Assembly: GCF_026571515.1 (NCBI RefSeq)
Contig: NW_026865326.1
Span: 248,001-312,000 of the forward strand
Direction of reading: 5' to 3'
Length of the DNA stretch: 64,000 bases
DNA from: Ruditapes philippinarum
Lineage: Eukaryota
Shown piece after piece: positions 12,535 through 62,239 of this stretch; positions within the stretch are counted from its first letter, which is position 1, and each line of letters begins with the position of its first letter. The notes beneath the pieces were generated by a model. The model saw only the letters and a program-made list of their open reading frames with translations, ran no database searches and had not been told where the DNA came from. A program made the translations under genes and the position numbers.

Positions 12535-12547
12535 GACTATATAAATA
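12535..12547 (+). promoter_or_regulatory. Putative TATA box of CYP copy 2
   Basis: GACTATATAAATA about 55 nt upstream of the ATG, paralogous to the copy 1 site. Confidence 0.55.
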
Positions 12548-12595
12548 TACTACGTTTTATTTGATATACGTTTAGATATCGACTGTGTTTTTAAC

Positions 12596-29132: not shown

Positions 29133-32100
29133 ATGGCGGATGCCAGGCAGTTTAACCTGAAGTTTGACGCTTCCAAAGGTCAGGCAGTAGACGAATACTT
29201 GGAATATAGAAGGTAATGTTTCTGATCTTAATACTTTTGTGCGTTGCTTCAAGAACGATCCCAAATCACTTTGTACTTTCTTAGTTTAGCTTGATACCTT
29301 AGCAGGGCTGGTTGGTTTAAACATATCTATTTAAGCTCGATTTCGAAGCAAGTTCTTGCCACTTACATTAATCACTTTCGAGTCCGTTTCCTGGAACCAA
29401 CCAGTACTGGTGTCATATGATGAAACATGGTCCTAACCCGATTAGTGCCCGGACCCATGATTCCTTGGTTGAGAGGCAGGCACCTTAACCTCTAAGCTAC
29501 CGCTCTCCTGGGCTGGTTAATGTCGGTCTGCAGATTATCCAGTCAGCCTACCACTTGCCGGAGTTCTACCTTGGAGCCCGTTCATGTCGGGTTCAATGTG
29601 CATGGGTCACGCCAAAGTCACAATATAACGTACAACTAATGTGATTAAAACGCATCCATGTGAAAACACAATTATAAAATGAATAAATATAACGTGCTTT
29701 ATCAGAATTCATTAATTTTGCTGCTTGATTTACAAAACAGAAAAGTATATTTAATAAGAGCACTCATTCTATAAATCTATAACTATCATGGATAAGCGAT
29801 CTGAATCGATAAATATAAAGTACGTGGGAGTGGGTGTGACCGAGTTACTGTATTGTAAACAAGAAGCTAAAGTCTAATATCCATATCTCTTTGAAATGCA
29901 AATATCCAAATATACTGCATGTACCGTTTGTTGTAAATATACCGCACATATGTATTACATTTCACACTTAACACAAAAGATCATTTGGTCACATATTTAT
30001 CAGTTAAACATACAAAATGTACATATGATATATATATAATATGTACAAAGAATTCTCATTAAATGACCTATTCCTTTTTAATAGTTGTTGTGAAGTACGT
30101 AAGAAAACATACTTTAATTCATAATTGCCCATTGTGAATGTTTGATTATGTTATTAATATAAATAATTCAATTTTAGGTTGTGCATGTCGCATAAAGGGA
30201 GATAATTAGAGGATCTTCTGTAATACTTTGAATGGAGTTCATTCCCTTCCTAATCACTGAGGTCGCAATTTCTTCTAATCCACAATACTCAATATCAACT
30301 GAAGACCCTTTAACTCTAAACAAATAAATTGGGTATTAAGATCCTTTTCTAACTGTGCATGCAGATTGAACTTGCTGCATATAAGACTCTGCATTGACTA
30401 AAATGATTGGATATGTTGTATGGAATTTATTTCATTCACATTTCAGTCCGCAAGCCAATGCTTCAGTGGGTGGATGGACCTTAACACATAACTTAATTGT
30501 TTAACAGTAAATAGCAAAAAGAATATGTGTTATCATTTTTGTGTACCTAATGCCTTTCTATGATAATATGTTTCAGTAATAGTTAATTAGTTTGCTTCTT
30601 ACTATAAAAAAACTATTCGTACTCGTATGTAATTACAGGATTGTAGGAGAAGATGACGGTGGTAAACTGTTTACACCTGAGGAGTTTGAAGAGTATAAAA
30701 AGAAGGTCCTTCCTTTGGTAAGACTATCAGTTTTAATCGCAAAATTATTTATTATCGTTTATTTATGTTATTACATAACATATTATAGTACTATATTTTT
30801 CACCATGAGGCATTTCATTCACACACAATTATGAAACATGCCTATAGAGTAACAATAGCTACATTGCCTGCATTTTAACTGATTTCCCATTTTGTAAGCA
30901 TAATGAATAAGTTTAAGATACTAGTATGAAAACAATATGTTTATTGTTTATTAGTTTATTTAAGTCTCATCCATTACATGTACATATAATACAAATATAC
31001 ATTCAATAAAACTTAAAATACATGTAAATGGTCATTTTTATGAAGAATTATAGGAGACTACATGTATGTTGTTACAAACATGTTACAAGTATCATAATAT
31101 ACAATCCACATTTACAAGGTTAGATCAGATTAAACCTTACACAGATAGGTATTTTACATAGTCATATATGAGCAGTCCAGTAAAATCAAAAACAATACAC
31201 ATCTGAGTAGTTGATTCATAATATTACTTAACTATAAGATTAAAATTTAATTTGTTACAATACTTTAAAACAGCTAAGATGTTCAATTCTTTACACTTTG
31301 ATATATCTCAAAAACAGCTAAAATCTTAAATTCTTTTAAAAAAAGGTGTTATCACTAAATGGCCTTTTTAGAAACAATTTCCATTGATAAAAAAGTGTTA
31401 AAACCATATAAAACTATATATGTACGTAAAAATACCTTATTATAATACAAGCATATAGCTAGTTTTTTTCCAGCTGGAGTGCTGATAATGCTCATTTACA
31501 AGCATAAAATGCAGCCATCTTACACATATATACAATCTGACCAGACCATATATGGTCTTGCTTCTCAATCTTAGCTTTTTCATATCAAACCCCAACCCCT
31601 TTAAACGTGTAATACTAAATGACAGATTCCATTTAAAAGCAGGAATAGTTTATTTCTAGAGGTAGAAATGTATATGTACATGATGGATGTAAATATTCCT
31701 TTGTTGCACAAACTATATCTCCAATGTTTTCAAACCTCGTATCATTTTATTATTATACGGTTTATAATTTGTATTTTAATATTAATTACACAGAGAATGA
31801 AGAATAGGCTGTATACCAGTCACAGTGGACCAACGGGCATGGACTGTAAGCTAGTGGGACCCGAGACGCTATGTTTCTGTAAACACAGGTAATTAATGCC
31901 AAATAACGTAACTATGTCCAATTTGTCAACTATTTGATATTGGTTGATAATAAACATAAAAATAACCAACACTTCATACGATTTTTGACCAATTTCATAA
32001 TACTAAAGGGTGTCTTTGACTATCTTATGAAATAATTATCTACTAGTATTTAACCGTCGTATAAAAATAGTTATTTATATAGTCGTTGCATAAACATATA

Positions 32101-35100
32101 TAACATGTATATGCCAGGATATGTAAATGTATCAAGTCTTATCATTCTAAACGTATTTTTATTTAATTTCAGGTACAAGCAACATAAGACGGATTTTGAG
32201 GAGATTCCCAAAGAACGTCCTATAAAGTTACCATGCCGGGCCTCCAAGTGTAAATGTGTCAGCTATCACTACGTACCACTAAATGGTTCTCAACCTATAC
32301 GGTGTCATTGTAAACACACATCGGATGAACACGCAGAGTTCGGAAAGTTAGTTTGCAAAAAAGGTAACCGCTTGTATTAGCAAGCAAAGTATTGTTAACC
32401 AAGATTACATAACATACGCAGATTTAAAATTCACGTTGCCACATTTATGCCTATAATTCTCCAATGATGTCAGACGCATTTCTTTTATTCTTACAGCTGG
32501 ATGCACAAAATGCACGGGATTCACGAGTTCGTTCACGTGCGGATGCGGTGCTCCAGTAAGCCAACACAAAATGATTGTTGAGACAGGAGAAGAACGCGAA
32601 GCTCGGGGGCATCCTCTAGGGGAGGCAACACCGTACGCTGCTATGGGCGGTATAACGGGATTCTCGTCTATGGCGGAAGGATACATGAGACTTGATCCTA
32701 GCGGGAAAGGTCCGTAGAAAGTAACCAAGAACTTCAAACATAACTCTTATATTAATTTTTCATATCATTTTATTATTCATGTTTTCTTTTCATATTTTCT
32801 TTTCATATAGATATAAATTGTTCCAAGATATGATACATTTTTTAATTTAATTAAAATGGATACTATATATAAAGTACAAATCGAAATATAATACACTGTT
32901 ATTATATATCAGCAATACTTTTACTAGTTAAATACTTTATCAATCCAATTAATACACACATGTACTGTGCATTTTACGGTTAAATTGAATATATTCAAGT
33001 TTAGAATATATGTTCCATAATACAGTCACAAAAGACATTACTTTTAATTTTACGCTCAACCTGGAAAAGCGCAACACGCCCCAGTAAAATAGTTTCTTTC
33101 AGTTCCTTCATTATAAAATCTTGTAATAATAATTCAGTAAACTTCACTAAGCCAAATGATCCAGATAAAATCATTTGTAATGCTTACTTATTTCAAGTGT
33201 AAGTTATAATGTATTTCTGTTAACCTAATCTTCTTTTCAGGTGCCCCTAACAAAGGGTTTTTGGAGCAATCTGTGACGTCATCAGATAACCCTTTCTTGA
33301 GAGCCAACGTACACGCTATAAAGCAGCATCAAATGAACAAGAAGCAACATGGTAAGGAAAAATCATTTAAATTATTTGCACGAGTATACATTTTATTTAA
33401 CAAAGTAGCTGACCTGAGTTGCTCCGACATACTGAGCAAAATGCGCTGTTGAATTTCAGTATGATTATGATGAAGTGTTTCATAGCTATTTTGCAAAGTT
33501 TGATATATTTATATGTATCCATTGAACTTTACTGTAAAGGAAAATCAAAATCATGTATATTAAAAGAATGATATATTTTCTAGTAAATCTAATGTATATA
33601 TCATTGTATTGTTTAAATCTATGGTGGCTAATGTGTGCCATACCGTACTTTTGATCCGCGGGGCGTTTGGCGAAAACACCACTTTTTTTTGCCTGGCGCC
33701 TCGACATGGCACAAATCAGCCACCATAATTATTCACTTTTTTTTGGACCTTACAATATATATTTAAGACTCCTTAAATTTTTCTTTTTCGCTATTTAAAC
33801 TGACTGGTAGGTCCAGTAATGGTTAATGCATTAGCCTATGTATGAAAGTCATCATGAGTCTTCCATGTTTAGATTTTATACGCACGCACATATATTTACA
33901 ACAGTACCTTAGAATAGATTTGTAAACATATATATAGTATATATAATTGTCACAATAATCAGTCATGTTTGTAAACATCTTCCTATTTTATATGTAATGA
34001 TGGAGTGTAGGACTTAAAGCCCTCTCCGTTTCCCGTAACGACGAATATGAAGAATTGATAGATATATGATTAGCAAATCATTTATAAAGATTTTTTTCAA
34101 TAAATTAATTTTAATATAAGCTAGACTATTTCGTATATGGTTTAACGCAGCAGATGATTTTATATACATGTAGATTTGAGAGTTTTCTTTTAGCAGGTTT
34201 TTCATATAAGATTTTATTCGGCACATTATTTCATATAAGATTTTATTCGGCACAGTATTTCTAAAAGGACATTAAAAAGCAGATTATTTCATATACTTTT
34301 TTCAGCAGCTTATTTCATAAATAAATATATATAATATTTTAATCAGTAGATTCATACAATACGTTTCCAGTATATTATATCATACATATTTGTACAGCAG
34401 ATTAATTCTTATAAATTTGTACAGCAGAATATTGTATATTACATGTTATTTTGCAGATTATTTCATATAAGACTCTTTAAGCAGATTATTTCATATACAA
34501 ATTCGTTCCGGCGATTATTTCCTATAAGATTTAATTCAGAAGATTATTTCAAATTCGAAACACACGTTTGTATTTCAGATATTGAAGCAGGTATATTTGT
34601 TTCCTGACACGTAGTTTCTTTGTGAATTCATTTCCCTCTTTTGATTAACCCTGTTCTTTAATTTCTTATCAAAAGGTGTTATATTCTAACTGGATTTCTT
34701 TTGAATTAGACCATTGTTAGAGTATGATAAAACATTTTTATTTTTCTTAAACATTGTAGATGAAATAATAGTTCATGACTTAAACAATTCTTACAATTAT
34801 AGTCGAGCCATAGTTTGTATAAAGTGTCGAGCCATAGTTTGTATAAAGTGTCGAGCCATAGTTTGTATAAAGTGTCGAGCCATAGTTTGTATAAAGTGTC
34901 GAGCCATAGTTTGTATAAAGTGTCGAGCCATAGTTTGTATAAAGTGGCATAATTTATTGACAAAAGGGCAGACATAAATAGAGGATAATATAACTTATTC
35001 TTTATATAAATACAGAATTTATTATCATTGAGTGATATGAAAATAAATATTTCACGAGTGGCAATAGTCATGAGATGAACAAATCCTGTATTTATAGAGA

Positions 35101-38100
35101 AAAAACTTGAATTTTCTGTTTGTTTTATACTTTTTCACTTTTTTTGGACCTTACAATATATATTTAAGACTCCTTAAATTTTTTTTTTGACCTTACAACT
35201 TCTCTTTAATTTTGTGTACTGGCTGAATTAAAATAAATTAGTCCGACAAGACACCAGTGAAAATACGGAAAATATGTTTCACTGCAGTAAAAACATAAAT
35301 TTGATAGTGAAAATACGATAAATGAAAATACGCATTTTATCTTATCAGTATTTCTCAATATTTCATTTATAAGTATATAATAAAGTTAAATAGTATTCAG
35401 TAAGCTGGTTTTGAGAACACATAGAAATGTTTGTGGTGTGTCACATTTTGCAAAATGAAACTTTAGATTTACTAACTTTGGTGAAGTTTCTTGTAGCATA
35501 TTTGTTTGTTTGTGATGTCTCGCAAATACAATTTAGAACAATTAATCATTATTCAGACAGAAATAAATAAATAAATAAATAAATAAATAAATGTAAATAA
35601 AAGAACACCACTAATGAACGGGTGTTTTTCTTTACTTTAAGCTGATCCTAGGACCAGGTTTTAATATACGTCTTTATGGTAGGTTAAGTTTTAATGTACA
35701 TTTTTTTATAGTAACCACCTACAATAAGACTTAAAATTACTAGTTTACTAAATTATGACAGGAAGCAGCTGTGTATCATCGGACATGAAACCCTTTATAT
35801 TGTAATAAAGTGATATAAATATAAATAGTTAGTCACATGGCTTTTTAACAGTCTTATTTTTAGACTGTTTTATTTCATGCAAATAAAGTAATTATATTTT
35901 TCTCCTTTTGGCGGACAGTAGGGAAAGAGACATATATGAATACTCACATTGATCCTGTCAAAGAACAGGCTTTCACAAACAACATGAAATATCTTGATTT
36001 ATGTTATTAATAATAATTGTAAATTAATTCTTATTTTAAAGGTTAAAGCTGTAATAAACAGTTTTATGCATTTTATGATTAAGTTATAATATGCAGATGT
36101 ATGCAGACGTTCAAGGTTAATAAAAAATTAATTCCTGTCCTTAAAATAAACACGTTCTAGCAAAAACAAAACTATTTTATTGTGAAATTAGGTTCCGCTC
36201 TAAACAATAACAGGGGAAGTAGTTTTGGTTCTTAAATGAGGCTTGTGATATTAGGCAAAAGTGAGCAAGAATCGTCAAGAATCAATAGGCGAAAAGAGCT
36301 ACATCCTCGTCCATAATGTATAGAGTAGTTCACAATGAATAAGTAATAGAAAGAGCATCGAAACACCAGGCTATCTGATTTGTTCAAGGGGGCGTAGCCC
36401 CCCCCCCCGAGTATTAATCAGATTGCCGAGTGTTTTGATGTTCTTTCTCTTTTGTATCATAGTCAAACATAAAAACACGTTCCCTGGTGTCACAATATGA
36501 AACCCCGGCAAAAAGGAACCAATGAACGAACATCTGAATATGATTTTTCTGTCGCTTTCCCTTTCTCTGCCGTCACAATATGTGAACACCAGCAAAAATG
36601 AGCCAATCAATGGGCATGCTCTGGAGTGCGGGTATCTAATACCTGCACTCCAGTTAACGCACTGTGCATGTATATGTATACGATTTAACTCTGACACATT
36701 TTCAACAGAAAGGTCCCCAAACTATGATACAACTAACATAAATCGTTTCAAATGTTGAAAAACGAGATAATTTACGAGACAACTGTTTCCTTATGTTCAA
36801 AAATAAAAATACTATATTTGTCTTTCTCTTGTTATTTTATCAACTCTTATGCACTTGTCACAATCTGTCATGCTGAAAAAAACCTATTCTCTCTTCACAA
36901 TCCATCGTTCTCGTGTATAATATTGTTACGTCCATTGAAGACGTTGTTAAGATACGAAGATTTTTGTGAACATCAACCATGTTCACGTGTTAAATATTGT
37001 CACTTTCTTTGAATATTTTTGTTAACATAAACCATGTTCAAGTGTAAAATATTGTCACGTGCATTGAAGATTGTTGTTAACATCAGCCATGCTAACGTGT
37101 AAAATATTGTTACGTGCATTGAAAATTTCTGTTAGCATCAACTATTCGCATGTAAAATATTTTTACGTTTATTGAAGGTTTCTGTTAACCAACCAACAGG
37201 TTTGCGATCTAAAGATTGTTATATTCGTTAAACAAGATTATTAATTATATGCCATTGTTTCAACCTTGTCCACGTGTCAGATGGTTGTTATGATCCTTCT
37301 CTTTTAACTTGTTTATCTATCAGAAAATTGCTATATTCATAACTGATATTCTAACTATAGATTTACTATGTACGCGTGTCAAATAATTTTTTAATCATTT
37401 TTGTCACGTGTAAGAATATTTCTGTGCATTGCTTATCCTACATTTTCGTTTTAACATCGTACACGTGTTAGATGATTGTTCTGGTTTTGTTTTTTAACAC
37501 CATAGGCCTACATTACGCATCAGTTATATGTATCAGACTTTGTCCTAATTGTTGTTTATTTACCATTGTGATGGTAGCAGTTGTTTAACATTGTCGTTAT
37601 AAATCAAACAAATTATGTAGATTAACAGTCATACATAACCTTGTAAATAAACGACAATAGAAAGAAAAACTAAAATAACACTCATGCGCACGTGTGGAGT
37701 TATTTGACAATGGTAAACAATGTTTCATTCGATTGTTTTAAAATAAAATAAGAATGCAATTTAAGATAAGTTAAAGTTATGCATCATTCAATCCAAAAGC
37801 CATGTGTCTGCTGTTATTGTCGGAAAATATCAAACACATCTGTGCTGTGTTATGTCAAATGTCTGTTATTTTTGTAAATAAAAATAAAAAAGTATGAATT
37901 GAATTTACATATGTATCGATTTAAAAAAACCATAACAAATTTGATTCCATTTCATGAAATTATTATTGCAGCATTTAGGACAAATCTCGTATACCTTAAA
38001 TAAACTAAAATAACTACACCCGTGATATAGATTATTTTCGTTCAATGAAACAGATCATTATCATCATCATCATCATCATCACTATCATCATCATCATCAT

Positions 38101-41100
38101 CATAATCATCATCATCATCATCATCACTATCATAATCATCATCATCATCGGCTGCAGCAGCGGTAGGAGTAGCAGCAACAGCGGCAGAGGCAGCAGCGCA
38201 CAGTATTATCATCATCATCATCAGCAGCAGCAACATAATCNNNNNNNNNNNNNNNNNNNNNNNNNNNNNNNNNNNNNNNNNNNNNNNNNNNNNNNNNNNN
38301 NNNNNNNNNNNNNNNNNNNNNNNNNNNNNNNNNNNNNNNNNNNNNNNNNNNNNNNNNNNNNNNNNNNNNNNNNNNNNNNNNNNNNNNNNNNNNNNNNNNN
38401 NNATAATCATTAGCAGCAGCAGCAGAAACGACAGCAGTAACAACAACAACCGCAAACATTACATTGTACACGTGTACAAGTCATTGGCCGCATGGATCAT
38501 AAGAGTATTTATATACTCGTTACAGAAGTTATGATGGTATGCTGTATGTTTGTCTCTTCGGCGTCAAAAGATTGATGGTTATTTACTCATTAATGTTTTA
38601 CCATGATGATGGAAAAAAGAATACAGTTCATCTTAAAACAAACTTCGTAAGAAGAGACATTTTTGAGTGATATCCCAAATTTTACACTTATACATGATAG
38701 ATCTAAGTAATGTTGTGTCGCCACGAAAACTGTTTGTACGTGTACACTTTGCGTAGCGGGGGAAAAAAACGCACACTGACGGGGACCAGCCATCATTATA
38801 TCCGGTTGGGCATGAATATATTAACATATTATACCTTGTATAAAGTTTTTCATTATAAATAACCCACCATAAGGCCAGCTTTGTAAGATGGTATTTGTAT
38901 TACTGGTGAACCCTCTTTTACACTTATACACACATTAATTTACTGCAAACATCTGACGGCATCTCATTTTCCTTATATATCTTACATTTTCATGATGAAC
39001 CATAGGTCATACCTATCTTCATAAAATCAACTTTATAACTTGGTATTTTTGTCCATGAAGCATTTTTATAACACTAAAATAAATCATAGCACTGGTTGTA
39101 TGTCACAGGTTTGAGAGATATTACTATAAGCAGTAATAAAACATGGAAGTGTAACGTATGTCAAAATGTTGCTTTAACGTTGATTATAAGGTTGTTAAGA
39201 ACATTTTCATGACCTTACTCGCACACTTTGAATTAAATGTGACTCTTTATTAGGAAAAATGTTCTTAAACAGAAACGAATACATTTTACTTATCATGGGT
39301 TGTGTAATGTTTGAATATAGATGTTTTAGAGTATAGTAGATACGTATTACCTGACAAAAGGAGCGATAAATGTGAAATTATTTTGTCATAAAGTTAGCAA
39401 AATGTCAACAAAGTAGTATTTTAACTGACATACAGAATACTAAATCACTGTACTAATTGACAAAAGAAAAAAAAACAACAGAAGAAAAAAAAGATGGTTC
39501 AGGTTATTGGCCAATGAATAACAGTTTGGAAAGTATAAAAGCACACGCACACATCCATGCACGCACACGCACGCACACCCATGCACGAACACGCAAGCAC
39601 ACACACACATACACAAAAAAAACAACAACAACAACAACAACAAAAAAACCTGAGAAAATAGTAGAAAAGCATTTCATGGTCAGAATGGGCCTTTCAGTCC
39701 TATAGCTACTTATCTTCTCCAACAATTACCGTCTTGAAGCCGAACGTGTATTTTCATACGCATCTCGACGTTAAGTAGACCTTCTAGAGGCACATTATGA
39801 ATGTTGTTATTATGCTGTTTTTTTGTGGTATTTTTAACATCAAATGTGATTAGACACATAATATACGAATTATGACTATATTAATCAATGACTATTATAA
39901 CACGGTTTATTCATATTTCTATCACGTTATAGCTAAATCTACAAATGAGCATGTTGATATAATAACTTATGACTTCATGTAAATAGTTCATGTTTATTGA
40001 AGGTGACTTATATGCCCATTTGGCCGGGTGTATTTAATATGTTATATTATTTGAATTGTAAAATATGTTAACACAAATTACTACAATAAAAATAAGTTAC
40101 CTACTTGTTACTCTTTCATGAAACTATTGTTTTTATTTTTTTTGTATCATTAGAGTTCAAAAATAACTTTATATTGTTGTCCCCTACATATCTAATTGTA
40201 TTTTTGTAATTTTACTATTTCCCTTTCATTTCAACATTATTATTTTGTACAATTCATACGTTCATGNNNNNNNNNNNNNNNNNNNNNNNNNNNNNNNNNN
40301 NNNNNNNNNNNNNNNNNNNNNNNNNNNNNNNNNNNNNNNNNNNNNNNNNNNNNNNNNNNNNNNNNNNNNNNNNNNNNNNNNNNNNNNNNNNNNNNNCATA
40401 CGATATTCAAATTCACTTTTTTGCATTTAAAAGTAATAAAAATAAGTACAAGAACTATATGTTTATTTACAATATTTACTGACCGATCCATTGACTTAGT
40501 TTTTTTATGACTATTTTCAATAATGTTTGTTGCGATTTGCTGAATTAATACTCTACAAGTGATATAAATATTGCTTTCTTTTTTGATATATTACCGCAGG
40601 TTTCATTTTCTTGTGTTGCAACGGAATTTCATCTATTTTGTAGGTTTGACTGGACCAGAGGACGAAATATTTGACGATATAGGCGAACGAGTGTCGTCCA
40701 GGCGGCGCCCGGGGGAGGATGACATGACATACTATGAGCGTAGATACCAAGAGAGAGTACGAAATTAATCAAGTTAAATTGACCCATTCTAAAGTAGGAC
40801 TGTGCGCGTACGATTATATTCTAAATATAGCTATTAACAGCCTCCAGCTAAATTTGTTTGTTTGATTTAGCCTCGAATGTCGCCTTCATATTAAAAGAAG
40901 CGACTTTCTCATGGTATATGATGAAAAAGAATTTAAATTTTAATTGTGTGGTGCTTGCTGTATGTGATATACGCCTATAAAATGAATAATTTTTTTTCAT
41001 GTACAATCGTAGTGATTACTATTTAAATAAATTTATTCATATTTCAGCAAGCAAATCAACCTAGTGGCCGAGAGCTCGACTCTCAAATGGACAAACTGAC

Positions 41101-41155
41101 TATCGGATCAAGGAGAGCTGTCGAAGAAAAGCCAAGATCTGGTCGTAGAAAATGA
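29133..41155 (+). CDS. FAM221A: Protein FAM221A (DUF4475 family), 8 coding exons, 329 aa (333 aa with the candidate microexon)
   Basis: Exons 29133-29212, 30639-30717, 31794-31888, 32173-32363, 32497-32709, 33241-33351, 40644-40756, 41048-41155; GT-AG with consistent phases. Peptides AVDEYLEYRRIVGEDDGGKLFTPEEFEEYK, TGMDCKLVGPETLCFC, VPLNGSQPIRC, PYAAMGGITGFSS and RRPGEDDMTYYERRYQER match vertebrate FAM221A as I recall it. Two N gaps lie in intron 6. Confidence 0.93.
29310..29510 (-). mobile_element. tRNA-derived SINE (different head, same central domain) in FAM221A intron 1
   Basis: Minus strand reads GAGCGGTAGCTTAGAGGTTAAGG… then CAGTACTGGTTGGTTCCAGGAAACGGACTCGAA. Confidence 0.65.
34802..34945 (+). 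repeat. Perfect 24-bp tandem repeat x6
   Basis: (GTCGAGCCATAGTTTGTATAAAGT)6; source of the spurious CRAIVCIK and LDTLYKLW ORFs. Confidence 0.95.
36345..36732 (+). mobile_element. About 390-bp dispersed non-autonomous element
   Basis: Highly similar to the reverse complement of 60106-60488, with shared termini (TAATAGAAAGAGCATCGAAACAC … CCCCAAACTATGATACAA). Confidence 0.75.
36915..37200 (+). repeat. Degenerate tandem repeat, about 55 bp
   Basis: Recurrent CATCAACCATGTTCACGTGTAAAATATTGTCACGTGCATTGAAG. Confidence 0.65.
38054..38452. repeat. (CAT)n/(CAG)n/(CAA)n microsatellite interrupted by an assembly gap (38241-38402)
   Basis: Directly visible. Confidence 0.95.
40267..40396. other. Assembly gap (N run)
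   Basis: 130 Ns. Confidence 0.99.
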
Positions 41156-50198: not shown

Positions 50199-50214
50199 AA
50201 TTGGATTGTGTAGG

Positions 50215-50383: not shown

Positions 50384-51369
50384 CATATGATTTTTTTGGT
50401 GATGCCATATGTAAAATCAGGATCATGCAGTTAGTTTTGGTCAAATATAAACCGGTATATTTGTTGACCAAATATAATTTATTACACACATTTGCTAAAA
50501 GCCAGTTTGATACTAATCAATGATTACCCTTTCATCACCTGATACATTGACCATCAAGGATTATAAAATTTCATAACAATATAACAACACGAATGTCAAC
50601 ATCGTTGTTTCATTATGATTTTATCCTATTGGATCTAATTTTATTGACAGGTCTCACCAATGTCGATGTAATAATCAAAAGAAAAATACAGGTCTTTCTC
50701 GTAACACTTGCAAAATGTCCTTGCCCAGTATCGTTCACAAATTAAAGCAAGTTATATACTCCTTAACAGAAATCAACGTATTTTACATGTATTATAATTA
50801 TAATTTTAGAATGCATAGAACGAAGAATCTGTCAAATACTTGACATGATGTATCTATGTCATAACCAGAATTATTTATCATACCATTTGCAATTACATGT
50901 AATTCCACATTTGGGTTAGACTTTCTTTGCGGAGAAATTGTGAGACCAGACGTACATTTTTGAAAGAATATAAAACGAAGAACATCTCCAAGCTTTGGTA
51001 ATTTTTGTATGATTTAGTCATCTTAATTTTAGTTTAGTTTTCAGTTTTTTACTCTCCTGTGCATCAATCGAATGTTCCACTTTCACACAACACTGATGTA
51101 TTGCAAAATTATCATTATTCGTGGGACACTTATTTTCGTGGTTGTCGTGGATACGTCCACCAAGGAATTCAAGATCCAACGACATTTCATTTCGTCTGCT
51201 GTTAGATTATTTTGCATCACATTATTTACATTTTACCTTTTGGAAAAATAGACAGTCGGCGAATTTAAGAACCCCAAAAATGTTCTGTGTGACAAAAAGC
51301 CCACGAATAAAGGGAATTCCCGGTATTTACTAAGCAGCTGGGAGCGTAGAAACGGACACTAGCTTACGA

Positions 51370-52986
51370 TTAATGTTTGCGGGCTTTTCGTCGGTTTTCT
51401 CGTTCGTCGCCTGTTTCAACAGTCATTCTGTGTTCACAAATGGGTACTCCACATCCGCACAATAACGAACTTGTGAACCCAGTGCATTTATTGCACTCAG
51501 CTGAAATGAGTAAAAAAGAGAAAATAAGAATCCCTAAAGAAAGTCCAACACGACATAATTAAAAATGTTGCAGGCTCGGTTTGATTGAGCCTGTTCATAG
51601 ATGGAACTGTAAAGTTCAAACTACCGCCGACGACCCCTAGCTAGCACCGGCGTAAGCAGAATTTAACATTTAATCATGGTAATGGTAAAAGTTTGAATTT
51701 AGAAACATCCGTAGATGTGTTCCAACGGCGGTTATCATTGAACCTTCAATGTGACACTTCCGTGCCATTCCATGAAAAGCGGCGTATGGTCCCCAAGTAA
51801 TAGAAAGCGTGTGCCCTAAACGAGAAAACAATGGGCGGAACTAAATAAAATGGAATTTTGAAAGGGGATCAGAGGTTATGAAGCCTGCATATCACAGATA
51901 AGACGTCAAAAGACAAAGTTAAAAAGCAGGCAACATATCCTTAGGGTGATTCAACATTATTCAAGTAGGAATATTGGAACCACCCAACTAGAAAATTCCG
52001 AAAAAGTTAAAACTAAAAATACCACAAGCACAACAATAATGTCGTGCTGAACGATCTTTAAGGATCGGAAATATAACATCTCTGATTGAACTCTACTTTT
52101 ATCTAAATAATACAAGATATCTGCAGAATGTACAAATTTGACATTGTAAGAAATCGATTTTCAGACTATTGTACGTTTTCCAGACTATATTAGTCATGCG
52201 ACAGTACTTAAAATTAAAATAGTCTACACCGACAATTTCTTCTTGTAACAGTGATAAATTATGACCGACAACTTAGATGTACATTATTAAATAATGATGT
52301 AACATGACTATCAATCATATAATAATGTTTAAAAGTAAGTGCTTTAATTTTTTTAAATCCCAATTATTAAGATACTTAAATAATAAATGTTTTTTTTTTG
52401 CATTCACTTAGAACTGTGAATAAAGTACCGTGTACGAAACCTCGCAAGCAATTTACTTGAATATTACCTCTTTTACAAACAAAGTTTCCAAATTCTTCAT
52501 GTTCTTCTGGGGCGTGTTTACAATGACACTTTATGGCTGAACAGCACTTTGCCGGTACATAGTAATAACTGGCACATTTACAACCAGGGGCACGGCAAGG
52601 CAATCTAATTGGACGTTCTTTCGGAATAAATTCAAAGTCGGTCTTGTGATCCTTATATCTAAAAATTATAATTAAACTGTGTAAAATAAAAGGTTTTCTT
52701 GCATTTTGTATTTATAATAGACACGTGTAATTCTTCTTTAGCGTATCCTTTTCAACGATTTTGAAAGTAATTCTTTTTATAAATATATACAAACATTTTA
52801 TAGAATGTGAATGATTAGACTGAATGATTTTGTATAAATTTTTATATTAATAAAAAATACCAAGATAATTTCTTACACATGCTGACAAAAGCACTGTGTC
52901 CCTGGTTCCATTGTTCTACAATCTCTGCCAGTAGTGCTGGTATAACTGGTGTATATACCATTACTTTTATATAGTTGACTCGTCAT
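51370..52986 (-). CDS. Truncated FAM221A-like Cys/His-rich protein, paralogue A (143 aa)
   Basis: Exons 52986-52877, 52658-52468, 51500-51370; GT-AG, with phases 2 and 1 identical to FAM221A introns 3 and 4; open throughout: MTSQLYKSNGIYTSYTSTTGRDCRTMEPGTQCFCQH…PKERPIRLPC…KCCSAIKCHCKH…ETGDERENRRKARKH*. Confidence 0.85.
51841..51985 (+). mobile_element. Small decayed RT fragment in paralogue A intron 2
   Basis: Reads LNKMEF*KGIRG…RRQKTK…GILEP, resembling LINE RT LxKLExYGIRG…GVPQGSILGP. Confidence 0.35.
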
Positions 52987-53333
52987 CTTCTAAAACATGA
53001 AAAATATAATATTACGATATACACAATATAAAAAACAACAAACAGTGGCATAATACAATTAAAGTGGCCTTCAACTTTTCCAAAGGCTAGATACGTTATT
53101 TTTAAATAAATCATTTCATACAATTGTAAAATCAAAAGAACGAAACAGTACGCTAATGCTCACTGCTACTGCTAACTTCCTACCCGTCTCGATACCTCTA
53201 ATCTACTGGTCCACTCTCTATATCTAAATTAGTAAAGCGGACGATTTGTTTCCTGATTTTCTCTTTTTAAAAACGAGCGTCACTTACACGTTATAAGTAG
53301 CTCTCGGGACGCCGGTTTGAATACGGTTTAAAA

Positions 53334-53572
53334 ATGAGCCGCGTCACGACAAAACCAACATAGTGGGTTTGCGACCAGCATGGATCCAGACCAGCCTGCG
53401 CCAACGCGCAGTCTGATCAGGATCCATGCTGTCCGCTTACAAACCCTATAACAAGTAGAGAAACTGATAGCGAACAGCATGGATCCTGATCAGACTGCGC
53501 GGAGGCGCAGGCTGGTCTGGATCCATGCTGGTCGCAAACCCACTATGTTGGTTTTGTCGTGACGCGGATCAT
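53334..53572. mobile_element. Fold-back MITE with about 104-bp inverted arms
   Basis: ATGAGCCGCGTCACGACAAAACCAACATAGTGGG… pairs with …CCCACTATGTTGGTTTTGTCGTGACGCGGATCAT; internal CAGCATGGATCC sub-repeats. Confidence 0.85.
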
Positions 53573-54774
53573 ATTTAGTTTTTAACAACACAGAATTGTC
53601 TTTTCAATAGATCATAAAAACGGAAGGTCACTTTAAAATCTCTATACTGATTATGACTCTCGAACTTTTATTGTGTATATAAGATGCCATAATTTCTACA
53701 TACCTTATTAAACCCAGTAATGATTGATATGTACAGGTTTAGTGTTCATTTGAAATTAGATTACAAAATTAAATTGGTCAGTTTAATTTGGTAAATACTA
53801 ACTAATGAACACTGACCGATTTAGTGTTTGAAATCATTTCTATGAACAGTCGATCTACAAGACTGATTAATAGTTTTAGCTAAGAAAAATTGTTACGATA
53901 CATTTGAAACGTTAATCGTACTTGACAAAGAAAAATAAAAAAGCTAAGTCTCTTTGAATCACTATGATTGTTTTTGTGAGTATTATATATCCTGTTAAAG
54001 AAGAAAAAATATATATCAAACAGTTACCTTGTTGTAGTTATCAAACTTCCCACGCGTTTAAATCAGTACGATTTTACTACTGGCTTACTTTAGATATAGA
54101 TCGATACGAGCGAATTGGAAACGCGTCATAAATGGTCTATTTATAGTACTAAATGTAATACAACAATCCATATATAACTTTACCCTACGAGACTTAACCC
54201 ATCTCAGATATTGAAACATTCTTACCGAAAGACAGAAATAAGAATAGATGCATTTTTTCTTATCTTTTTCTATCTCTAATTAAAAGATTCTAAAATGCAA
54301 ATTGAAGGAAAGAAATACATGAAAGAATATGCAAGAATTGGCATTTCTTAATCAAAGATTTAAAGATTTAGTTTTTTAACCGCAGATAAAACACTTGATC
54401 TGCAAGTATGTTATATGTTGTCCCGGAGAAATTTTGAATATCGAGTTTCAGTTGAAAACGTTAATGGTACTACATGAGACTTAATTCGTCCGGATTTTTA
54501 AACTTTATTGGTTTACAAGCAGATTTAGCTTTACTAAGATATAAATTATACAAAGACAGTGTTAGTATTTTAAATAAGTAGGCATACAACCTGCATTATA
54601 AATTATGTTGTTATTTTTTTTTAGTTTTTTTAGTTTTTAATTCTTACATGTATTTCTCAAACTAGACATTTTTACAACTATTGCATTTTTGCCCACGACC
54701 CATTCATAAAAATAATAAGATAAGATAAGATAAGATAATATAAGTAAATTTTATTATAGTGACATTGTGTTATG

Positions 54775-57700
54775 TACATACATAATAACGATACCTTTTT
54801 ATTTTTACAACACCCGGCCACGTTGGGCCTACAAGTTACTTAATTTTTTAATCATTTTCAAAAATATATAATTTATAACATAATTTAGATATTAACTAAT
54901 TATATACATGCACGAACAAATAGTGATTTAAATGTTCTTGGACATAAAAACATCTGCATTATAAGAGAAATAGGACGTATACAAGTTTACTTTTTTCCAA
55001 TTACTTTCGGTATCAAATCACATATATGATACATATACAGTTGTCATTCATGTACATATCATTAGTGCAAATACATTTACAACATTAATTAATTAATTAA
55101 TTTCTGTACAGAGACATCCTTCTTCTGTTCATAGCTTCAACTAAAAATTTAGCAACATGCACATAATGATAATTGACAGCATATACTAACTTATTTACTT
55201 CAGACATATGTTCAAAATCAGGATTTCTATCTTTACATTTTGATAAAAGGTTCTATCGTAAGTCATTATATTTAATGCAGTTTAAAAGAAAATGAGTCTC
55301 ATCTTCTACAACATTAACTGGACAAAAGTGACAAAATCTTTCGTTTACATTTAAACCGACATATCTTCCCGTTTCTATCTTTAATGGAAGTATACCACAT
55401 CGGAATTGGGCTAAATGAGACCGTTCAATCTTAGTTAATGACGAAAGCAAATACTTTTCAGTATTATAATGTTGTTTAAATTCAATTATATGTTCTAAGT
55501 TTGGCAACATTTCTAACATTATTACACCAATCCGTTTTATATTTAACAAACAATGCATCTTCAACATCTTTTAGGTTTACAGGTAACTTGTTTTCATAGT
55601 AATGTGACATTTGAATCTGTTGCAATATAGTTTTTACATCATAGCACCATGTTTGAGTAAAATCTAAGTGCTCATGTAAATTAACACCCAAATATTTATA
55701 CATATCCGTAAACAATACAAAACAATCGCCTATTCTAAATTGAAAATTACTTCTATTTTTACCCTTATTTCTGAAATGCACAACCTTTGACTTTTCATTA
55801 TTAATAATACGTCGCCATTTCCGACACCATTCATGAACATAATCTAACATGTCTTGCATATCTTGTTCATTTCTCAGACAACAATAAAATGTCATCAGCA
55901 TAAAACAAACAACAAAAGTATATCATTATTAAACTGTACACCCTTGTTAAGAGTCTTTAAACCTTCAGCTAGATCGTTTATGAAGTAGGCAAAGATTGTT
56001 GGCGATCCGCTGTCTCCTTGCTTTACGCCAGACAGAGTCGGGAACCAGTCAGTTAACATACCCTTTAACTTAACACAAGACGATGTATCCGTCAAAATGG
56101 CCTTTATTGAGTTATAAAATTTTCCATTTATACTATTAGACAAAAGTTTATACAAAAGAACATCCCTATTGACAAAGTCAAATGCCTTTTTTATATCAAT
56201 AAAAGTTCCAAATGTATCAAGATTACTTAAAAGTCTATTTCTAATAATAGTACATGAGGTATAAACATGGTCCTCACACGACCGTTTCGAACGAAATCCG
56301 TTCTGCTCATCAACAAGTAACTCTTGATCTTCTAAATGTTTCTTTAGTCTATTATTTAACACAGCTGAATATAATTTGCTAACCACCGAGAGTAAACTTA
56401 TTCCTCTGTAATTCAAGGGTATACGTTTATCTTAAGTAATATCTTTTGTTATAGGGGCAATCATTGCTTTTCGCCATATACTTGGTATAATACCCGTATC
56501 AAAACACAAGCAAAAAAGTGAATGGAGTACATCTATTATGATTGGAAATTTTAACACTTCGCATGGAATTTTATCAAATCCCGTGCTTTTACAATTTTTG
56601 GCGGCTTTTACAACAATTTCAATTTCATAACGATTCAATGGCAAATAAAGAGCAGGATTATCTTCGAATAAGGGGTCGAGCATCTGATTTTCCATAAAAC
56701 GTTTTTCTCTGAGAATTTCCTCATAAAACTGGTTATCAAAATGATCACAATTTTTATTTACATTATATAGATCTTTAAAATCCCCAGACCATTTTTTAAA
56801 CACAAATTCACTATCGTGAATGATATCTCCGTTATCATCATACACTTCAAGAGGTGTCGAAGGTTTCCGTTTCGGACCAAGATTTTTAATATGATCCCAG
56901 AATGCTCTAGGGTCATTTGTGCAAGTACTCTCAATGTCGATCGAAAGATTTCGCTTGTAGGCTCGTTCAGCGCGTCGTAACTGTTTATCGAACAGACGTC
57001 TTGTCTCTGTGAATTCACTTTGCAATCGTAGTCACGTCCGTCTATCACCATGGAAACGCATGAAATTCCGCTCTGAGATGCATACGGCCTGCCACAGTTG
57101 CTCAATATCGTCGTCCCAGTAAGGCTTAAACGATTTGTAGCGTTTACGGGTTTTCTTTGAACAGTCAAATGACGGTATATGTTCATTCATTTCTTTTACT
57201 AAAGTATTACAAAATTGATCATAAATCAAATCAATATTGTGTTGATTTTCCCTACATAATTCAATATTACGTATCAAATTGCGAAATGCTGTTTTGGCCA
57301 AATTTGAAGACAAAAGTCATCTGGAATTCGTTTTAACTTGTATATCCGTGTATTAAATGGTGGTCGTGACTGCTGATTCGCGGGATTGTTAGTCTCGTCT
57401 GTTATAGCGGTACTATAATTATTTGTAAATCGTAAAATGTAGTGATCCGGTAATTTACTACGCTCTCCGATTAGACTCTTAAGATTATGCTTATCAAGAA
57501 TCGATGCAGGGGAAATAACTTCAAAATTATAACAAGCATTAAAGCAGTCATGTGGAACACAAACGTAGTCAACAACAGATTTTCCGCGAACTGAACCTGA
57601 CGTAAAAGTGTTTCTATCTTCATTAAACGGCCTTTTAAAACACACATCTTTGAGGCAATCAGAAAATCTACAAACGTCTGTCCATGCTGATTAACACTCT

Positions 57701-59160
57701 TGTCAATACACTTTCTCAATGGTATACCGTCAATGTCCGACATTATGTCCTGAAGTTCGCCGATCCTTGAATTATTATCCCCAATAACGAAAATAGCTTC
57801 ACAATCAGATAAAAGATAAATTTGTCCCAGCAAATGAGCGTAAAAGTCTGTTCAGTCCCCATGGTGAGTTTTCCGGTGGTAAGTATACGGAGTAGACGAT
57901 AATTTTATAATTTGTAGATTTTGCTGTGAACGAGAGTCCCAATATTCCATCATATGATTTGTCAATAACATCAACACGAAAATCATCAAACAAACAGTTT
58001 TTCACGAAAATTCCGACACCCCCTGAGCCTTTGGGTGCATTAACATGAGTTAACATTCTGTTATGTGAATAAAATCGGTAGCCTTCAAGAGCAATAGTTT
58101 GTGTGGCTTTTAAATGAGTTTCATTTACACAAATTATGTCAGATTTCATATGCAATAAGATTTGTGATCGAAGTTAATGATTTGATTCAGTCCAACCAGC
58201 AACATTTAAATGAGATACAGATATGGAATGTTCGATAAGCCGGGCGTTGGCTTATACCGGTGTAGCGGGTCCTCTTGATATGGGAACGCCATCGGCAGAA
58301 GCAGGCGTTTTCTTAACGATGCGTCCATTTCCAGTTACTCGGAATTGATTACCATTTGGTAATTCCGACAGTAAAGTTTTTGCATTCAGCTCAAGTATAC
58401 GTTCGGTGTGAGTTTTACTTCCGTATACATACACACGCTTATATTCCGGCTTCGACAATAATCTCTTCTTTGAACGGAGTACCTCGATCTTTTGCTTGAG
58501 ATTGTCAAAAGCAGTTTTCAATAACGGGGGTTTACCGGTATTCCTGTCTGAGCATCGACTCGCATCGGTAATTTTCACTTTGCTTGATATATCACTACCG
58601 AGAGCAGAGATCAAATCTTTTGTGCGTCGTCTAACGGTTGTTTTCCTGGGCGCAACGGTAAATTAGTAGCAATTACCATGAGCTCACAGTTATTGACCGT
58701 TTTATCTTGCTTCAAGCCAGAAATAGATTTCAGTGAATTCAGCAAAGTCAGCAAATCTTTTGTCCCAACAGGCAAATTGTAGGTCAAAATCAACTTTCAC
58801 TGCTTTTATTTTATCATCAATTGTTGCTAATACGTCCTTCCTCAATTTATCAATTTTGCTATCAAATGTCTTCTGGAGACTCTCTTGCCCCTTTTTTAAA
58901 ACAGCAAGTACTTCCATGATTTTATCAAAACGTTCATTTCACTGCAATCTTCACTATCAGCCATTTTTGATTGTTTGTATAGGGGACTTATCCCACCCGG
59001 AGATTCTCTTGCTCTTTTTTTCTCTAAATTTGAACGAGTTTCACTCATTATATTTCATATAAAAATAATATGTCAGTTGGTTTGTTTACTAAATGGCCCG
59101 ACTAGCCCTTCACAGTTTTCTTTATGACACATTTTCTAGAAGAAATCGGCCATGAAATGT
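54775..59160 (-). mobile_element. Decayed, near full-length non-LTR retrotransposon (LINE, CR1/L2 group)
   Basis: ORF1 remnants (about 59048-58252); APE endonuclease (DIICVNETHL, GGVGIFVK, VYLPP, IGDNNSRIG, VDYV, PDH); RT (NYRGISLLS, EQNGFR, DIKKAFD, GVKQGD, YADD near 55890 in a shifted frame, YKYLGV); C-terminal LKIETGRY…CHFC…EDETHFLLNC; many frameshifts; AATAAA near 54800. End coordinates approximate. Confidence 0.92.
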
Positions 59161-60105
59161 TAAAATGATCACAAGCAATTATCATTTCAACACGATTGAA
59201 CTGTATATATTATTTCAGCTAACTAGGTGTTAGGACAATTCGTTACAAAGTTTATGTTGACAATGTAAGGACGAAATACACACACATTAATACGTCACCG
59301 TTAACAACTTTTGATCTTGAATTGCTAAAAAGACGAATTCATCAACATAAATAACATAAACATATTCATCCAGGCAAAAAAATGAGATTGTTTCATTGAG
59401 AATAAAGACATATTGATATATATTCAACAAACAACATACATTTCTCCTTTTAAATACTATACGTATATATTTATAAGATTTTATTTATAAATATTCCTTA
59501 GACAAAACAATGAATTGAATATTTTCATGCTTAAAGTGGGTTGATCTGGAATGGGCATATTTTCATTTGTATTTCAAATTATTGACAAAAGATAATAGAA
59601 GTGTATCATTTAAATACTCTTATAAATTTAAACATTTGTTAAAAACAACAATGGCAATGTTGTTCCTAGTGATTTAGTATGTTTTTATATGTAGGATAGT
59701 AATAATGTGTTGCAGAACAATTCTATTATAAACTACATTGTATATTTATATATTTGTAATGTCGGATCATTAATTTCACACTTAATAAAATATCCATATA
59801 TATCTTTCTTTCATGGCTTGTTGTCACCAAAGATACTTAATATATTTTAGATATATATTTATGACATTGCAGACATTCCGATATGGACACATTCGCTTTA
59901 AGCTTTATAATGATAAAATATTTCTGTTTGCAATAATGTAACATCAAAGGTATAAGCGAGGCAGAAATTCATTAGCTTTGGACATATTAAATGTACTGTG
60001 AAAGAGGTACCTAATTGTCAGAAGACAAATCATACGCTTTAGTATAGTTCATAAACGAACATATTAACAATTGACAGAATCATAAATGGTTAAACTAATA
60101 TTGCA

Positions 60106-60488
60106 TTGTATCATAGTTTGGGGACCTTCCTGTTGAAAATGTGTCAGAGTTAAATCATATACATATACATGCACAGTGCGTTAACTTGAGTGCAGGTATT
60201 AGGTACCCGCGCTCTAGAGCATGCCCATTCATTGGTTCATTTTGTCTGGGGTTTACATATTGTGACGACAGAGAAAGGGATAGCGATAGAAATATTATAG
60301 TCAGATGCTCGTTCATTGGTTACTTTGTCCTGGGGTTTTATATTGTGACATCAGGAAACGTGTTTTATTTTTGTCTATGATACAAAAGAGGAAGAACATC
60401 AAAACACTCGGCAATCCTGATTTATACTCGGGGGCTACGCCCCCTCGTACAAATCAGATAGCCTCGTGTTTCGATGCTCTTTCTATTA
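60106..60488 (-). mobile_element. Second copy of the 390-bp dispersed element
   Basis: See 36345-36732; both give the near-identical spurious ORF MSELNxIHIHAQCVN. Confidence 0.75.
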
Positions 60489-61052
60489 CATAACTAATGA
60501 GGGGCTGCTATTTTATATGTTTAACTGATAACCACACTAGCGTCACTTTTACACACTCTTCATGGTCAAATCATTTACTGAAAAAATGAACGAATTTAGA
60601 AAAGCTTTACTTTTGTGTCTAAACGGAACGTTTAAAAGGTGTTTTGAGGATGATATTTATAAAAGCGGTTAATATTGTAAAACACTGACAAAAACTTAAG
60701 ACATGATATCGTGATAGTTTTAATGTAGTAAACCACCATTAACAGGATATGATGAGAAATAAAATGAAATATTTCCTCATTGGCCTTTTCAGTTAAAACA
60801 ACAGTTTCTCATTTTCTGAATCAAATAAACTTTTAATTAAAAATAAAAAGAATTAATCATGTTTACATATGTAAGCCCGACAATAACATGTTTTAGTAAG
60901 GTCTTATTTCAATTCTGAGAATATATATTTAAAAATAATAAATTAAGTGTAAAACTATACAAAAACAAGCACAACAATATCGACACCACGAGAAAAGAAC
61001 ACTAGCAGTAATGACCACATTGTACATCGCACTGTTAAGAAACAACACGTCA

Positions 61053-62239
61053 CTATTGGCCATTTCCTCCACGCCTTGTTTCACGCTCATCACCTGTTTC
61101 AATAGTCATTTTATGGTTATTAACGGGTACACCACATCCGCAAATGAATGAGCTAGAAAATCCAGTACAGCTAGTACATCCAGCTGAAAGAGATGGATCA
61201 ACTTATAACACTTGACAAATGATAACATTTTAGCCATTGGGATATAAATCATTTTATCGTAATTTCTATTATTTTATTTTATTTAAATTATCCAATAAAA
61301 GTATAAGTTATATATACAGTATATACATAAAGTGATCGATAAACATCCATCTGTTATGGAAGTTCCTGTAATTCTCAGACATTTTCTTTGCAATTGCATT
61401 GTTATTATAAAATTAAAGTTCCTACAGAAAGGGCTAAGCCGATTGGAATATACATTTGAGTTATACACATATATAATATGCACTGTATATAGACTTACCA
61501 ACCGAAAGTGATAAGCCTTTGTCACCAGTATAGCGCCACGCCAGTCTTAACTTCATTGAAGTATGCAACGGTTAGCTTTAATTTATACTGAAATGCCGTT
61601 AACCTTTTCAACAACACGTAAAAATATTCATTACCTCTTTTACAAATATATTTTCCGAATTCTGAATGTTCGTCGGGAGTGTGTTTACAATGACAGCGTA
61701 TTGGCGAGCAGCAGTTGAGAGGAGGTACGAAGTGAAAGCTGGCACATTTACAACCAGAGACCCGGCATGGTAACTTTATTGGGCGTTCTTTAGGGACCTC
61801 CTCAAAATTAACCTTGTGGTTCTTGTAACTACATATAATATAGATACAATTGATGAAACGACGGAAAGTTAGTATATATAACGTAAAATATGTTGTAGCG
61901 TAAACTTCCCTTTCGTGACAATTAAAGCAATAAAATGTTATTTTGAAAATGAAAGAATGCATATTCAGTCTCGAATCATTTCTTCGGCAAGTCTAAAAAG
62001 CATAATTAGAGGTAATGATTTAAACTACGAAAGACATATCTGAACTCAATAGAAATGTTAAAAATAATGAGTAGATAAAAAAACCAGATTGTTTCAGAAT
62101 TCAAAAATACAGATCCGAAGTATTATTACCCATGTTGACAGAAACACAATGTTTCTGGTTCCATTGTTCTACAATCTCTGCCAGTAGTGCTGGTATAACT
62201 GGTGTATATACCATTACTTTTATATAGTTGACTCGTCAT
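61053..62239 (-). CDS. Truncated FAM221A-like Cys/His-rich protein, paralogue B (144 aa)
   Basis: Exons 62239-62130, 61828-61635, 61183-61053; open throughout: MTSQLYKSNGIYTSYTSTTGRDCRTMEPETLCFCQH…PKERPIKLPC…NCCSPIRCHCKH…ETGDERETRRGGNGQ*. Confidence 0.85.

What the first reader, a model, noticed from the sequence alone, without database searches (positions are those of the whole stretch)
51370..62239. A tandem pair of intact 'mini-FAM221A' genes reduced to the Cys/His core, with a gained Cys-Cys motif
Seen: two 3-exon minus-strand genes correspond to exons 3-5 of the full FAM221A 10-20 kb away, with identical intron positions and phases. They have a new start (MTSQLYKS), lack the conserved N-terminal helical part and everything from PYAAMGG onward, and stop at the same codon position despite different tail sequences. 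Exons 2-3 differ at many synonymous sites between A and B and the introns are unalignable by eye, yet there are no stops or frameshifts and all 13 parental core Cys are kept. The parental LNGSQ loop became KCCS/NCCS (16 and 15 Cys in total). Inference: these are selected, functional small metal-binding or thiol-rich proteins born by partial inverted duplication of a normally single-copy gene of unknown function. They would also delimit an autonomous fold in FAM221. I know of no description of such a family.
Basis: partly seen in the sequence, partly recalled or inferred. Interest (0 to 1): 0.8.

Follow-up and report, generated by a model that had tools for sequence, protein, structure and literature searches.

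The report
Two short clam FAM221A-core genes
Two intact, transcribed and selectively maintained short genes in the Manila clam encode only the cysteine/histidine-rich core of the uncharacterised FAM221A protein; they are real but already auto-annotated and have a counterpart in the hard clam.

Summary
The window is Ruditapes philippinarum. Two minus-strand 3-exon genes (A 51370-52986, 143 aa; B 61053-62239, 144 aa) copy exons 3-5 of a full-length plus-strand FAM221A gene (29.1-41.2 kb), with the same intron positions and phases. Only the exons align. A-B dN/dS is 0.15 at dS about 1. All 13 Cys and 5 His that are invariant or nearly so across the family are kept. Neutral simulations almost never keep the frame and never keep all the Cys. 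Spliced transcript contigs exist for A (exact junctions in two runs) and for B. AlphaFold2 gives a confident compact model (pLDDT 88) with no PDB counterpart.

Corrections:
- Both genes are already RefSeq models named "protein FAM221A-like".
- Mercenaria mercenaria has a 149-aa counterpart with its own Cys-Cys loop, so the short form probably predates the split of the two genera (tree 95/90; AU test does not exclude two origins).
- Cys-Cys in this loop also occurs in 9 full-length homologues.
- Bivalves carry two old FAM221A lineages.
- The stop position varies between alleles.

Metal binding is inferred, not tested. Verdict: a real, selected, truncated-paralogue lineage of a known family of unknown function. 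Moderate interest.

The parts
52877..52986 (-). Mini gene A, exon 1 (ATG at 52986; 36 codons plus 2 bases of a split codon; donor GTAAGA)
   Evidence: The transcript contig in run X2 covers 52991-52877 and joins to 52658.
52468..52658 (-). Mini gene A, exon 2 (63 whole codons, contains the KCCS loop)
   Evidence: The junctions 52877|52658 and 52468|51500 are seen in contigs of X1 and X2.
51271..51500 (-). Mini gene A, exon 3: coding 51500-51370 (stop TAA 51372-51370), then 3' UTR to at least 51271
   Evidence: X2 record 10 reaches 51271.
62130..62239 (-). Mini gene B, exon 1 (ATG at 62239; donor GTAATA)
   Evidence: The product equals RefSeq XP_060570316.1 / P0091.
61635..61828 (-). Mini gene B, exon 2 (64 whole codons, NCCS loop, one extra Pro)
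61053..61183 (-). Mini gene B, exon 3 (stop TAG 61055-61053)
   Evidence: The spliced Logan protein P0086 matches except for the last residues.
29133..41152 (+). Full-length parental FAM221A gene (8 coding exons). Exons 3-5, at 31794-31888, 32173-32363 and 32497-32709, are the source of the duplicates.
   Evidence: tblastn with the Mercenaria full-length protein P0217 gives 8 pieces at 81-96% identity. Splice sites.
55253..58614 (-). LINE-type retroelement remnant (endonuclease and reverse-transcriptase ORFs) between A and B. Not part of the genes. Absent from the allelic contig C1042.

Best explanation
A and B are functional, protein-coding, truncated paralogues of FAM221A. A partial inverted duplication copied exons 3-5 of the neighbouring parent. 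Its products begin at or near the start of the former exon 3 and end soon after the last conserved His.

The short form most probably arose before Ruditapes and Mercenaria diverged. It then duplicated in tandem in the Ruditapes lineage to give A and B.

Each product is a stand-alone FAM221 core. This is a compact domain whose 13 Cys and 5 His are inferred to hold several structural zinc ions. It lacks the conserved N-terminal segment and the C-terminal PYxAMGG...RLDPSG and later motifs of the full protein.

Mechanism (inferred, not shown): the mini protein keeps the binding surface of the core but not the terminal motifs. It would therefore act as a separate or competing binding module relative to FAM221A. 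An extra Cys pair sits in the loop between ligand groups C65 and C81.
For: **Shown.**
- Gene structure and intron phases match the parent.
- The genes belong to Pfam FAM221: 155 bits for A against a cut-off of 25.
- dN/dS is 0.148 for A-B, 0.10 for A-parent and 0.075 for B-parent. For A against its C1042 allele it is 0.12, with 13 synonymous and 7 non-synonymous differences.
- In the neutral simulation at the observed dS, 0.14% of 20,000 runs keep the open frame, 0 of 20,000 keep all Cys, and expected identity is 15% against 74% observed.
- All 13 Cys and 5 His that are invariant or nearly invariant in 77 full-length homologues are kept in all 3 mini proteins.
- Spliced contigs with the exact junctions cover A in runs X1 and X2, while the unique intron stretches have depth 0-10.
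- A 145-aa spliced B product sits on a 1253-bp Logan contig.
- The Mercenaria 149-aa counterpart groups with A+B at 95/90 support.
- The AF2 model has pLDDT 88 and pTM 0.76.

**Inferred.** Zinc binding, and the role as a binding module.
Against: - The AU test does not reject a separate origin of the Mercenaria gene (p 0.165).
- The mini branches are long (0.42, 0.16 and 0.47, plus a 0.61 stem, against 0.0095 for the Mercenaria parent), so long-branch attraction could make the clade.
- Several family-invariant non-ligand residues are changed, for example G27, G75 and R10. A and B keep only 51 and 50 of 77 conserved columns, so the ancestral surface may not be kept.
- The C1042 copy of B carries a frameshift that removes the predicted C-terminal helix.
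- The two raw-read RNA runs show depth of about 0-2 on the exons, so expression is low or restricted.
- No metal, partner or tissue data exist. The AF2 alignment is dominated by full-length proteins.
Confidence: 0.75

Rival explanations
1. A and B are decaying, non-functional partial duplicates that merely happen to be still open and transcribed.
For: - They are truncated copies next to the parent.
- The tails differ between alleles, and the C1042 copy of B is frameshifted in exon 3.
- Depth is low in the raw RNA runs.
Against: - dS for A-B is about 1.05 with dN/dS 0.148.
- Under neutrality the open frame survives in 0.14% of 20,000 runs and all Cys in 0 of 20,000.
- Splice sites are intact in both copies and in the C1042 copy of A.
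- A counterpart exists in Mercenaria.
Confidence: 0.04
2. They are metallothionein-like metal- or thiol-buffering proteins: induced by Cd/Zn/Cu, holding labile metal through the enlarged Cys set including the Cys-Cys pair.
For: - They are small, with 15-16 Cys and 7 His.
- A new Cys-Cys pair is kept in all three mini proteins.
- Exon 2 of B gives a weak Metallothio_5 hit (18.1 bits, E 0.0029).
Against: - That hit is below the 25-bit cut-off. It is absent for the whole A protein at E <= 0.01.
- Cys is only 11% of residues, and aromatic residues are common (sequence).
- The Cys/His pattern is the fixed family pattern of a folded domain, not a flexible thiolate chain.
- CC in the loop also occurs in 9 full-length homologues.
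Confidence: 0.1
3. The Ruditapes and Mercenaria short genes arose independently, as two convergent truncations with convergent Cys-Cys gain.
For: - The AU test does not reject Mercenaria mini + Mercenaria parent as a clade (p 0.165, delta lnL 6.3).
- The CC pair sits one residue apart in register in the two genera. The start and end points also differ.
Against: - The ML tree joins the three mini proteins at 95/90.
- They share changes at otherwise invariant columns: G27, G75 to C, and P95.
Confidence: 0.2
4. The three exons are part of longer genes, with further coding exons that restore a full protein.
For: - An AG lies 3 bases before the ATG of A. The first 8 letters of the X2 contig do not lie on the window, so a 5' non-coding exon is possible.
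- RefSeq models the C1042 copy of B as 177 aa with another 3' exon.
Against: - An in-frame TAG lies 6 bases upstream of the ATG of A.
- The stops lie inside exon 3, and the transcript contig runs 99 bases past the stop.
- RefSeq models are 143 and 144 aa.
- The Logan transcript of B encodes 145 aa.
- No other FAM221 exons lie near A or B.
Confidence: 0.05

Closest known systems
FAM221A/B family (Pfam PF14753), full-length FAM221A of bivalves (e.g. Mercenaria XP model P0217, 333 aa)
   Same: - They share the core domain, with every conserved Cys and His.
- Intron positions and phases are the same.
- Pfam score is 155 bits.
- The ESM Atlas model of A superposes on a FAM221A cluster (TM 0.85 over 135 residues).
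   Different: - The conserved N-terminal segment (54 conserved full-length columns are absent) and everything after the core are missing.
- The proteins evolve much faster.
- A Cys-Cys pair replaces part of the NGSQ loop.
- The function of the family itself is unknown. In the listings I saw no biochemical study.
Mercenaria mercenaria 'protein FAM221A-like' XP_045175385.2 (149 aa)
   Same: - It is a short stand-alone core with a CC loop.
- It lies on the same chromosome record as the Mercenaria full-length gene.
- It groups with A and B.
   Different: - It starts at the parental Met position.
- It keeps a degenerate PY..GG..G stretch at the C-terminus.
- Its CC pair is shifted by one residue.
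- I saw a single copy only.
Metallothioneins
   Same: Small, Cys-rich, with C-x-C and C-C motifs.
   Different: - Cys content is only 11%.
- Many aromatic and His residues are present.
- A confident folded model is obtained.
- The Pfam metallothionein score is below its cut-off.

Membership tests
FAM221 (PF14753) | Pfam profile score above the gathering cut-off | tested here: met
   A scores 155.2 bits and the Mercenaria mini 193.8 bits against a cut-off of 25. 8 of 8 exon peptides are above the cut-off.
FAM221 (PF14753) | Conserved set of 13 Cys and 5 His in the core | tested here: met
   All are kept in A, B and the Mercenaria mini, judged against 77 full-length rows.
FAM221 (PF14753) | Conserved N-terminal segment and C-terminal PYxAMGG...RLDPSG and later motifs of full-length members | tested here: not met
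   54 conserved full-length columns have no counterpart in the mini proteins. Mercenaria keeps only a degenerate PY..GG.TG. A and B cover profile positions 32-162 of 196.
Metallothionein | Match to a metallothionein profile; very high Cys content without aromatic residues | tested here: not met
   Metallothio_5 scores 18.1 bits, below the cut-off of 25, on exon 2 of B only. There is no hit for the whole of A at E <= 0.01. A has 16 Cys in 143 residues and many Tyr/Phe.
Metallothionein | Metal-inducible expression and labile multi-metal thiolate clusters | not testable with these tools
   No metal-exposure expression data or protein chemistry was available.
Non-functional duplicate (pseudogene) | Stops or frameshifts, dN/dS near 1, no spliced transcript | tested here: not met
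   Frames are open in the window. dN/dS is 0.075-0.148. Spliced contigs exist. Exception: the C1042 copy of B has a 1-base deletion in exon 3.

The most novel reading that the evidence does not exclude
The venerid mini-FAM221A proteins are a clam-specific lineage of stand-alone multi-zinc domains with a fold that has no solved counterpart. They would have left the parental function behind and would use the added, solvent-exposed Cys-Cys pair for a new activity, such as redox or metal sensing or lipid anchoring. This would give a natural minimal construct that makes the biochemistry of the whole uncharacterised FAM221 family directly testable.
Probability: 0.2. Interest if true: 0.6.

Novelty: new variant of a known kind. 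Interest (0 to 1): 0.4.

Why it matters
FAM221A/B is a widely conserved animal protein family. In the paper listings I saw, it has no known biochemistry and no solved structure.

A naturally truncated form that selection has maintained marks the boundaries of a domain that can apparently stand alone. It keeps all conserved Cys and His. That makes it a convenient 143-residue construct for metal analysis and structure determination.

It is also a clean example of a new gene born by partial duplication and then kept for a long time. The practical value is modest. The genes are already auto-annotated, restricted to venerid clams as far as I could see, and without phenotype or expression context.

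Tried and rejected
- **Genomic context of the transcripts.** The look-up of encoding contigs was meant to fetch the Logan contig of the B transcript and the Mercenaria locus. Synteny in Mercenaria therefore rests only on both proteins listing the same 73,516,942-bp record.
- **Structure comparison.** This led nowhere. Foldseek against the PDB gave 0 matches at E <= 0.001. VIA-align against 48,161 chains gave a best Z of 2.0. The PDB sequence profile gave nothing below E 0.33. The ESM Atlas found only FAM221A itself.
- **Zinc-site geometry.** Model coordinates are not exposed, so I could not measure it.
- **Papers.** The search (any 2 of 6 terms) was badly designed and uninformative. 'FAM221A-like' gave 0 papers. 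The FAM221A and FAM221B listings showed expression and association studies only. In PMC6735960 I read only two passages, a knockout fertility table that lists Fam221b. In PMC13280272 I read only one passage, a gene table. Supplementary files were not opened.
- **Start codon in Ruditapes.** I first took it for the parental Met with a 5-codon internal duplication. The DNA alignment fits a collinear reading about equally well, in which the start lies 6 codons upstream of the parental Met position. The question is left open.
- **Other reads.** I rejected the metallothionein and pseudogene readings (see the membership tests).
- **Further copies.** The own-genome search with exon 2 of B gave 6 matches from 7 candidates: A, B, the parent, the two C1042 copies, and the second FAM221A lineage on C191. 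I saw no further mini copies and no intronless copy.
- **Status of C1042.** I did not resolve whether it is an allelic haplotig or a recent segmental duplicate.
Full report
**What is there**

The window is part of contig C13813 of a 1.41-Gb assembly. The exact product of gene A is a RefSeq protein of Ruditapes philippinarum, the Manila clam.

On the minus strand lie two three-exon genes:
- Gene A has exons 52986-52877, 52658-52468 and 51500-51370.
- Gene B has exons 62239-62130, 61828-61635 and 61183-61053.

Donors are GT and acceptors AG. The first intron splits a codon after its second base and the second intron after its first base. The products are 143 and 144 residues.

A full-length FAM221A gene lies on the plus strand at 29133-41152. 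tblastn with the Mercenaria full-length protein finds eight coding pieces there at 81-96% identity. Its exons 3-5 (31794-31888, 32173-32363, 32497-32709) have the same intron positions and phases as the short genes.

All 8 exon peptides that I scanned pass the Pfam FAM221 cut-off. The duplicates are inverted relative to the parent.

**Is it more than chance or decay?**

Between A, B and the parent only the exons align. Introns and flanks do not.

Nei-Gojobori counts were made exon by exon and pooled as counts:

| Pair | dS | dN | dN/dS |
|---|---|---|---|
| A-B | 1.05 | 0.156 | 0.148 (bootstrap 0.069-0.258) |
| A-parent | 2.52 | 0.249 | 0.10 |
| B-parent | 2.78 | 0.210 | 0.075 |

The A-B path runs only through short-gene lineages, so the constraint acted on the short genes themselves.

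A neutral simulation at the observed dS kept an open frame in 0.14% of 20,000 runs and kept all Cys in none. Expected identity was 15% against 74% observed (100 of 135 codons).

In an alignment with 77 full-length homologues, all 13 conserved Cys and all 5 conserved His are present in A, B and the Mercenaria short protein.

Exon 1 is much more alike between A and B (dS 0.30) than exons 2-3 (dS 1.5-2.2). This suggests gene conversion or nucleotide-level constraint at the 5' end. I did not resolve this.

**Transcripts**

- Fourteen runs guessed to be RNA hold 17-24% of the sampled words of the 1.8-kb A locus. That is about its exonic share.
- Laid on the window, a 544-base contig of run X2 covers 52991-52877, 52658-52468 and 51500-51271 in one piece. 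These are exactly the predicted junctions plus 99 bases of 3' UTR.
- Run X1 shows the 52658/52877 joint at depth 87. Unique intron stretches have depth 0-10 in both runs.
- Two runs of raw RNA reads, sampled at about 4-6%, gave depth of only about 0-2 on the exons. Expression there is low or tissue-restricted.
- For B, a Logan contig of 1253 bases encodes a 145-residue product spliced at the predicted junctions. The genome search found no intronless copy.

**Already annotated, and not alone**

- A is XP_060570304.1 and B is XP_060570316.1. Both are named 'protein FAM221A-like'.
- A 21.8-kb contig, C1042, is collinear with window 43997-63442 at 78-97% identity. It carries a second pair of copies and is probably the other haplotype.
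- On C1042, A is intact but three codons longer, and Ser replaces the extra Cys at position 121. B lacks one codon in exon 1 and has a one-base deletion after 'TIE' in exon 3. RefSeq models it as 177 aa.
- The common stop position is therefore not a conserved feature.
- Mercenaria mercenaria, in the same family Veneridae, has a 149-residue 'FAM221A-like' protein. It starts at the parental Met position, ends a little later, and reads PLCCTSP in the loop. It is listed on the same 73.5-Mb record as the Mercenaria full-length gene.

**History**

An ML tree of 37 proteins puts A+B together at 100/100. It puts the Mercenaria short protein with them at 95/90, inside the bivalve FAM221A lineage that holds the Mercenaria parent.

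The Ruditapes parent was left out of the tree, because I did not build its spliced product. Its exons are 94-96% identical to the Mercenaria parent over exons 3-5.

The AU test did not reject a tree that joins the Mercenaria short and full-length proteins (p 0.165). A single origin is therefore favoured but not proven.

The tree also shows two old FAM221A lineages in bivalves. The second Ruditapes gene is on contig C191.

The profile search with the three short proteins listed 120 of 121 hits. By length, name and the sequences that I read, only the Ruditapes and Mercenaria entries are short spliced forms. I did not read all 120 sequences. Most short hits that I read are single-exon ORFs called on unspliced contigs.

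**The Cys-Cys loop**

A pattern scan of all 315 stored proteins found CC in this loop in two groups:
- the Ruditapes and Mercenaria short proteins and their exon ORFs;
- 9 full-length homologues from metagenome sources, which read GCC.

The pair is in a different register in Ruditapes, Mercenaria and those proteins. It is a recurrent variant of the family and not a unique gain.

**Structure**

AlphaFold2, using an 80-row alignment, gives A a mean pLDDT of 88 and pTM of 0.76. Only the first five residues score below 50.

No solved structure resembles it. The only Atlas neighbour is FAM221A itself.

**Reading**

These are real, selected, expressed genes for a stand-alone FAM221 core. The inferred mechanism is a zinc-stabilised binding module that has lost the terminal motifs of the parent.

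The short proteins evolve much faster than the parent and have changed some invariant non-ligand residues. A shifted function is therefore plausible. The metallothionein and pseudogene readings fail their tests.

I found no paper on these short genes, or on FAM221 biochemistry, in the listings. Supplementary files were not consulted.

**Verdict**

This is a new variant within a known, functionally uncharacterised family.

Noticed in passing
window 55253-58614 (-): A LINE-type retroelement remnant lies between A and B, with reverse-transcriptase and endonuclease ORFs (RVT_1 78 bits, Exo_endo_phos 30 bits). It is absent from the collinear contig C1042, so it is an insertion polymorphism or a difference between copies.
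   Followed up: partly
C1042 (L007/L010) about 9272-18059, against window 60979-61058: The collinear contig carries about 8.8 kb of extra DNA immediately downstream of the stop codon of its B copy.
   Followed up: no
window 23343-26961: A large minisatellite: 84 copies of a 43-bp unit, 94% matches. It produces long artefactual ORFs.
   Followed up: partly
window 51488-52159 and 53252-53400: Stretches in intron 2 of gene A and upstream of it have very high depth in all four runs, with many strand-switch and back joints. They are repeats (transposon-like) that are abundantly represented in RNA runs.
   Followed up: no
window 60106-60492 and 36340-36732: A 390-bp repeat at 89% identity, inverted, is shared between the region downstream of gene B and an intron of the parental FAM221A gene.
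   Followed up: no
G000 contig C191 about 163466-169032 (L009): A second full-length FAM221A-type gene of Ruditapes. It belongs to the other old bivalve lineage and is 77-90% identical, exon by exon over most exons, to the Mya arenaria 327-aa protein.
   Followed up: partly
window 52870-52993 against 62123-62246: Exon 1 of A and B is 91% identical in DNA, with dS 0.30 against 1.5-2.2 for the other exons. The similarity ends within about 7 bases of the exon. Possible gene conversion or constraint on the 5' coding end.
   Followed up: partly
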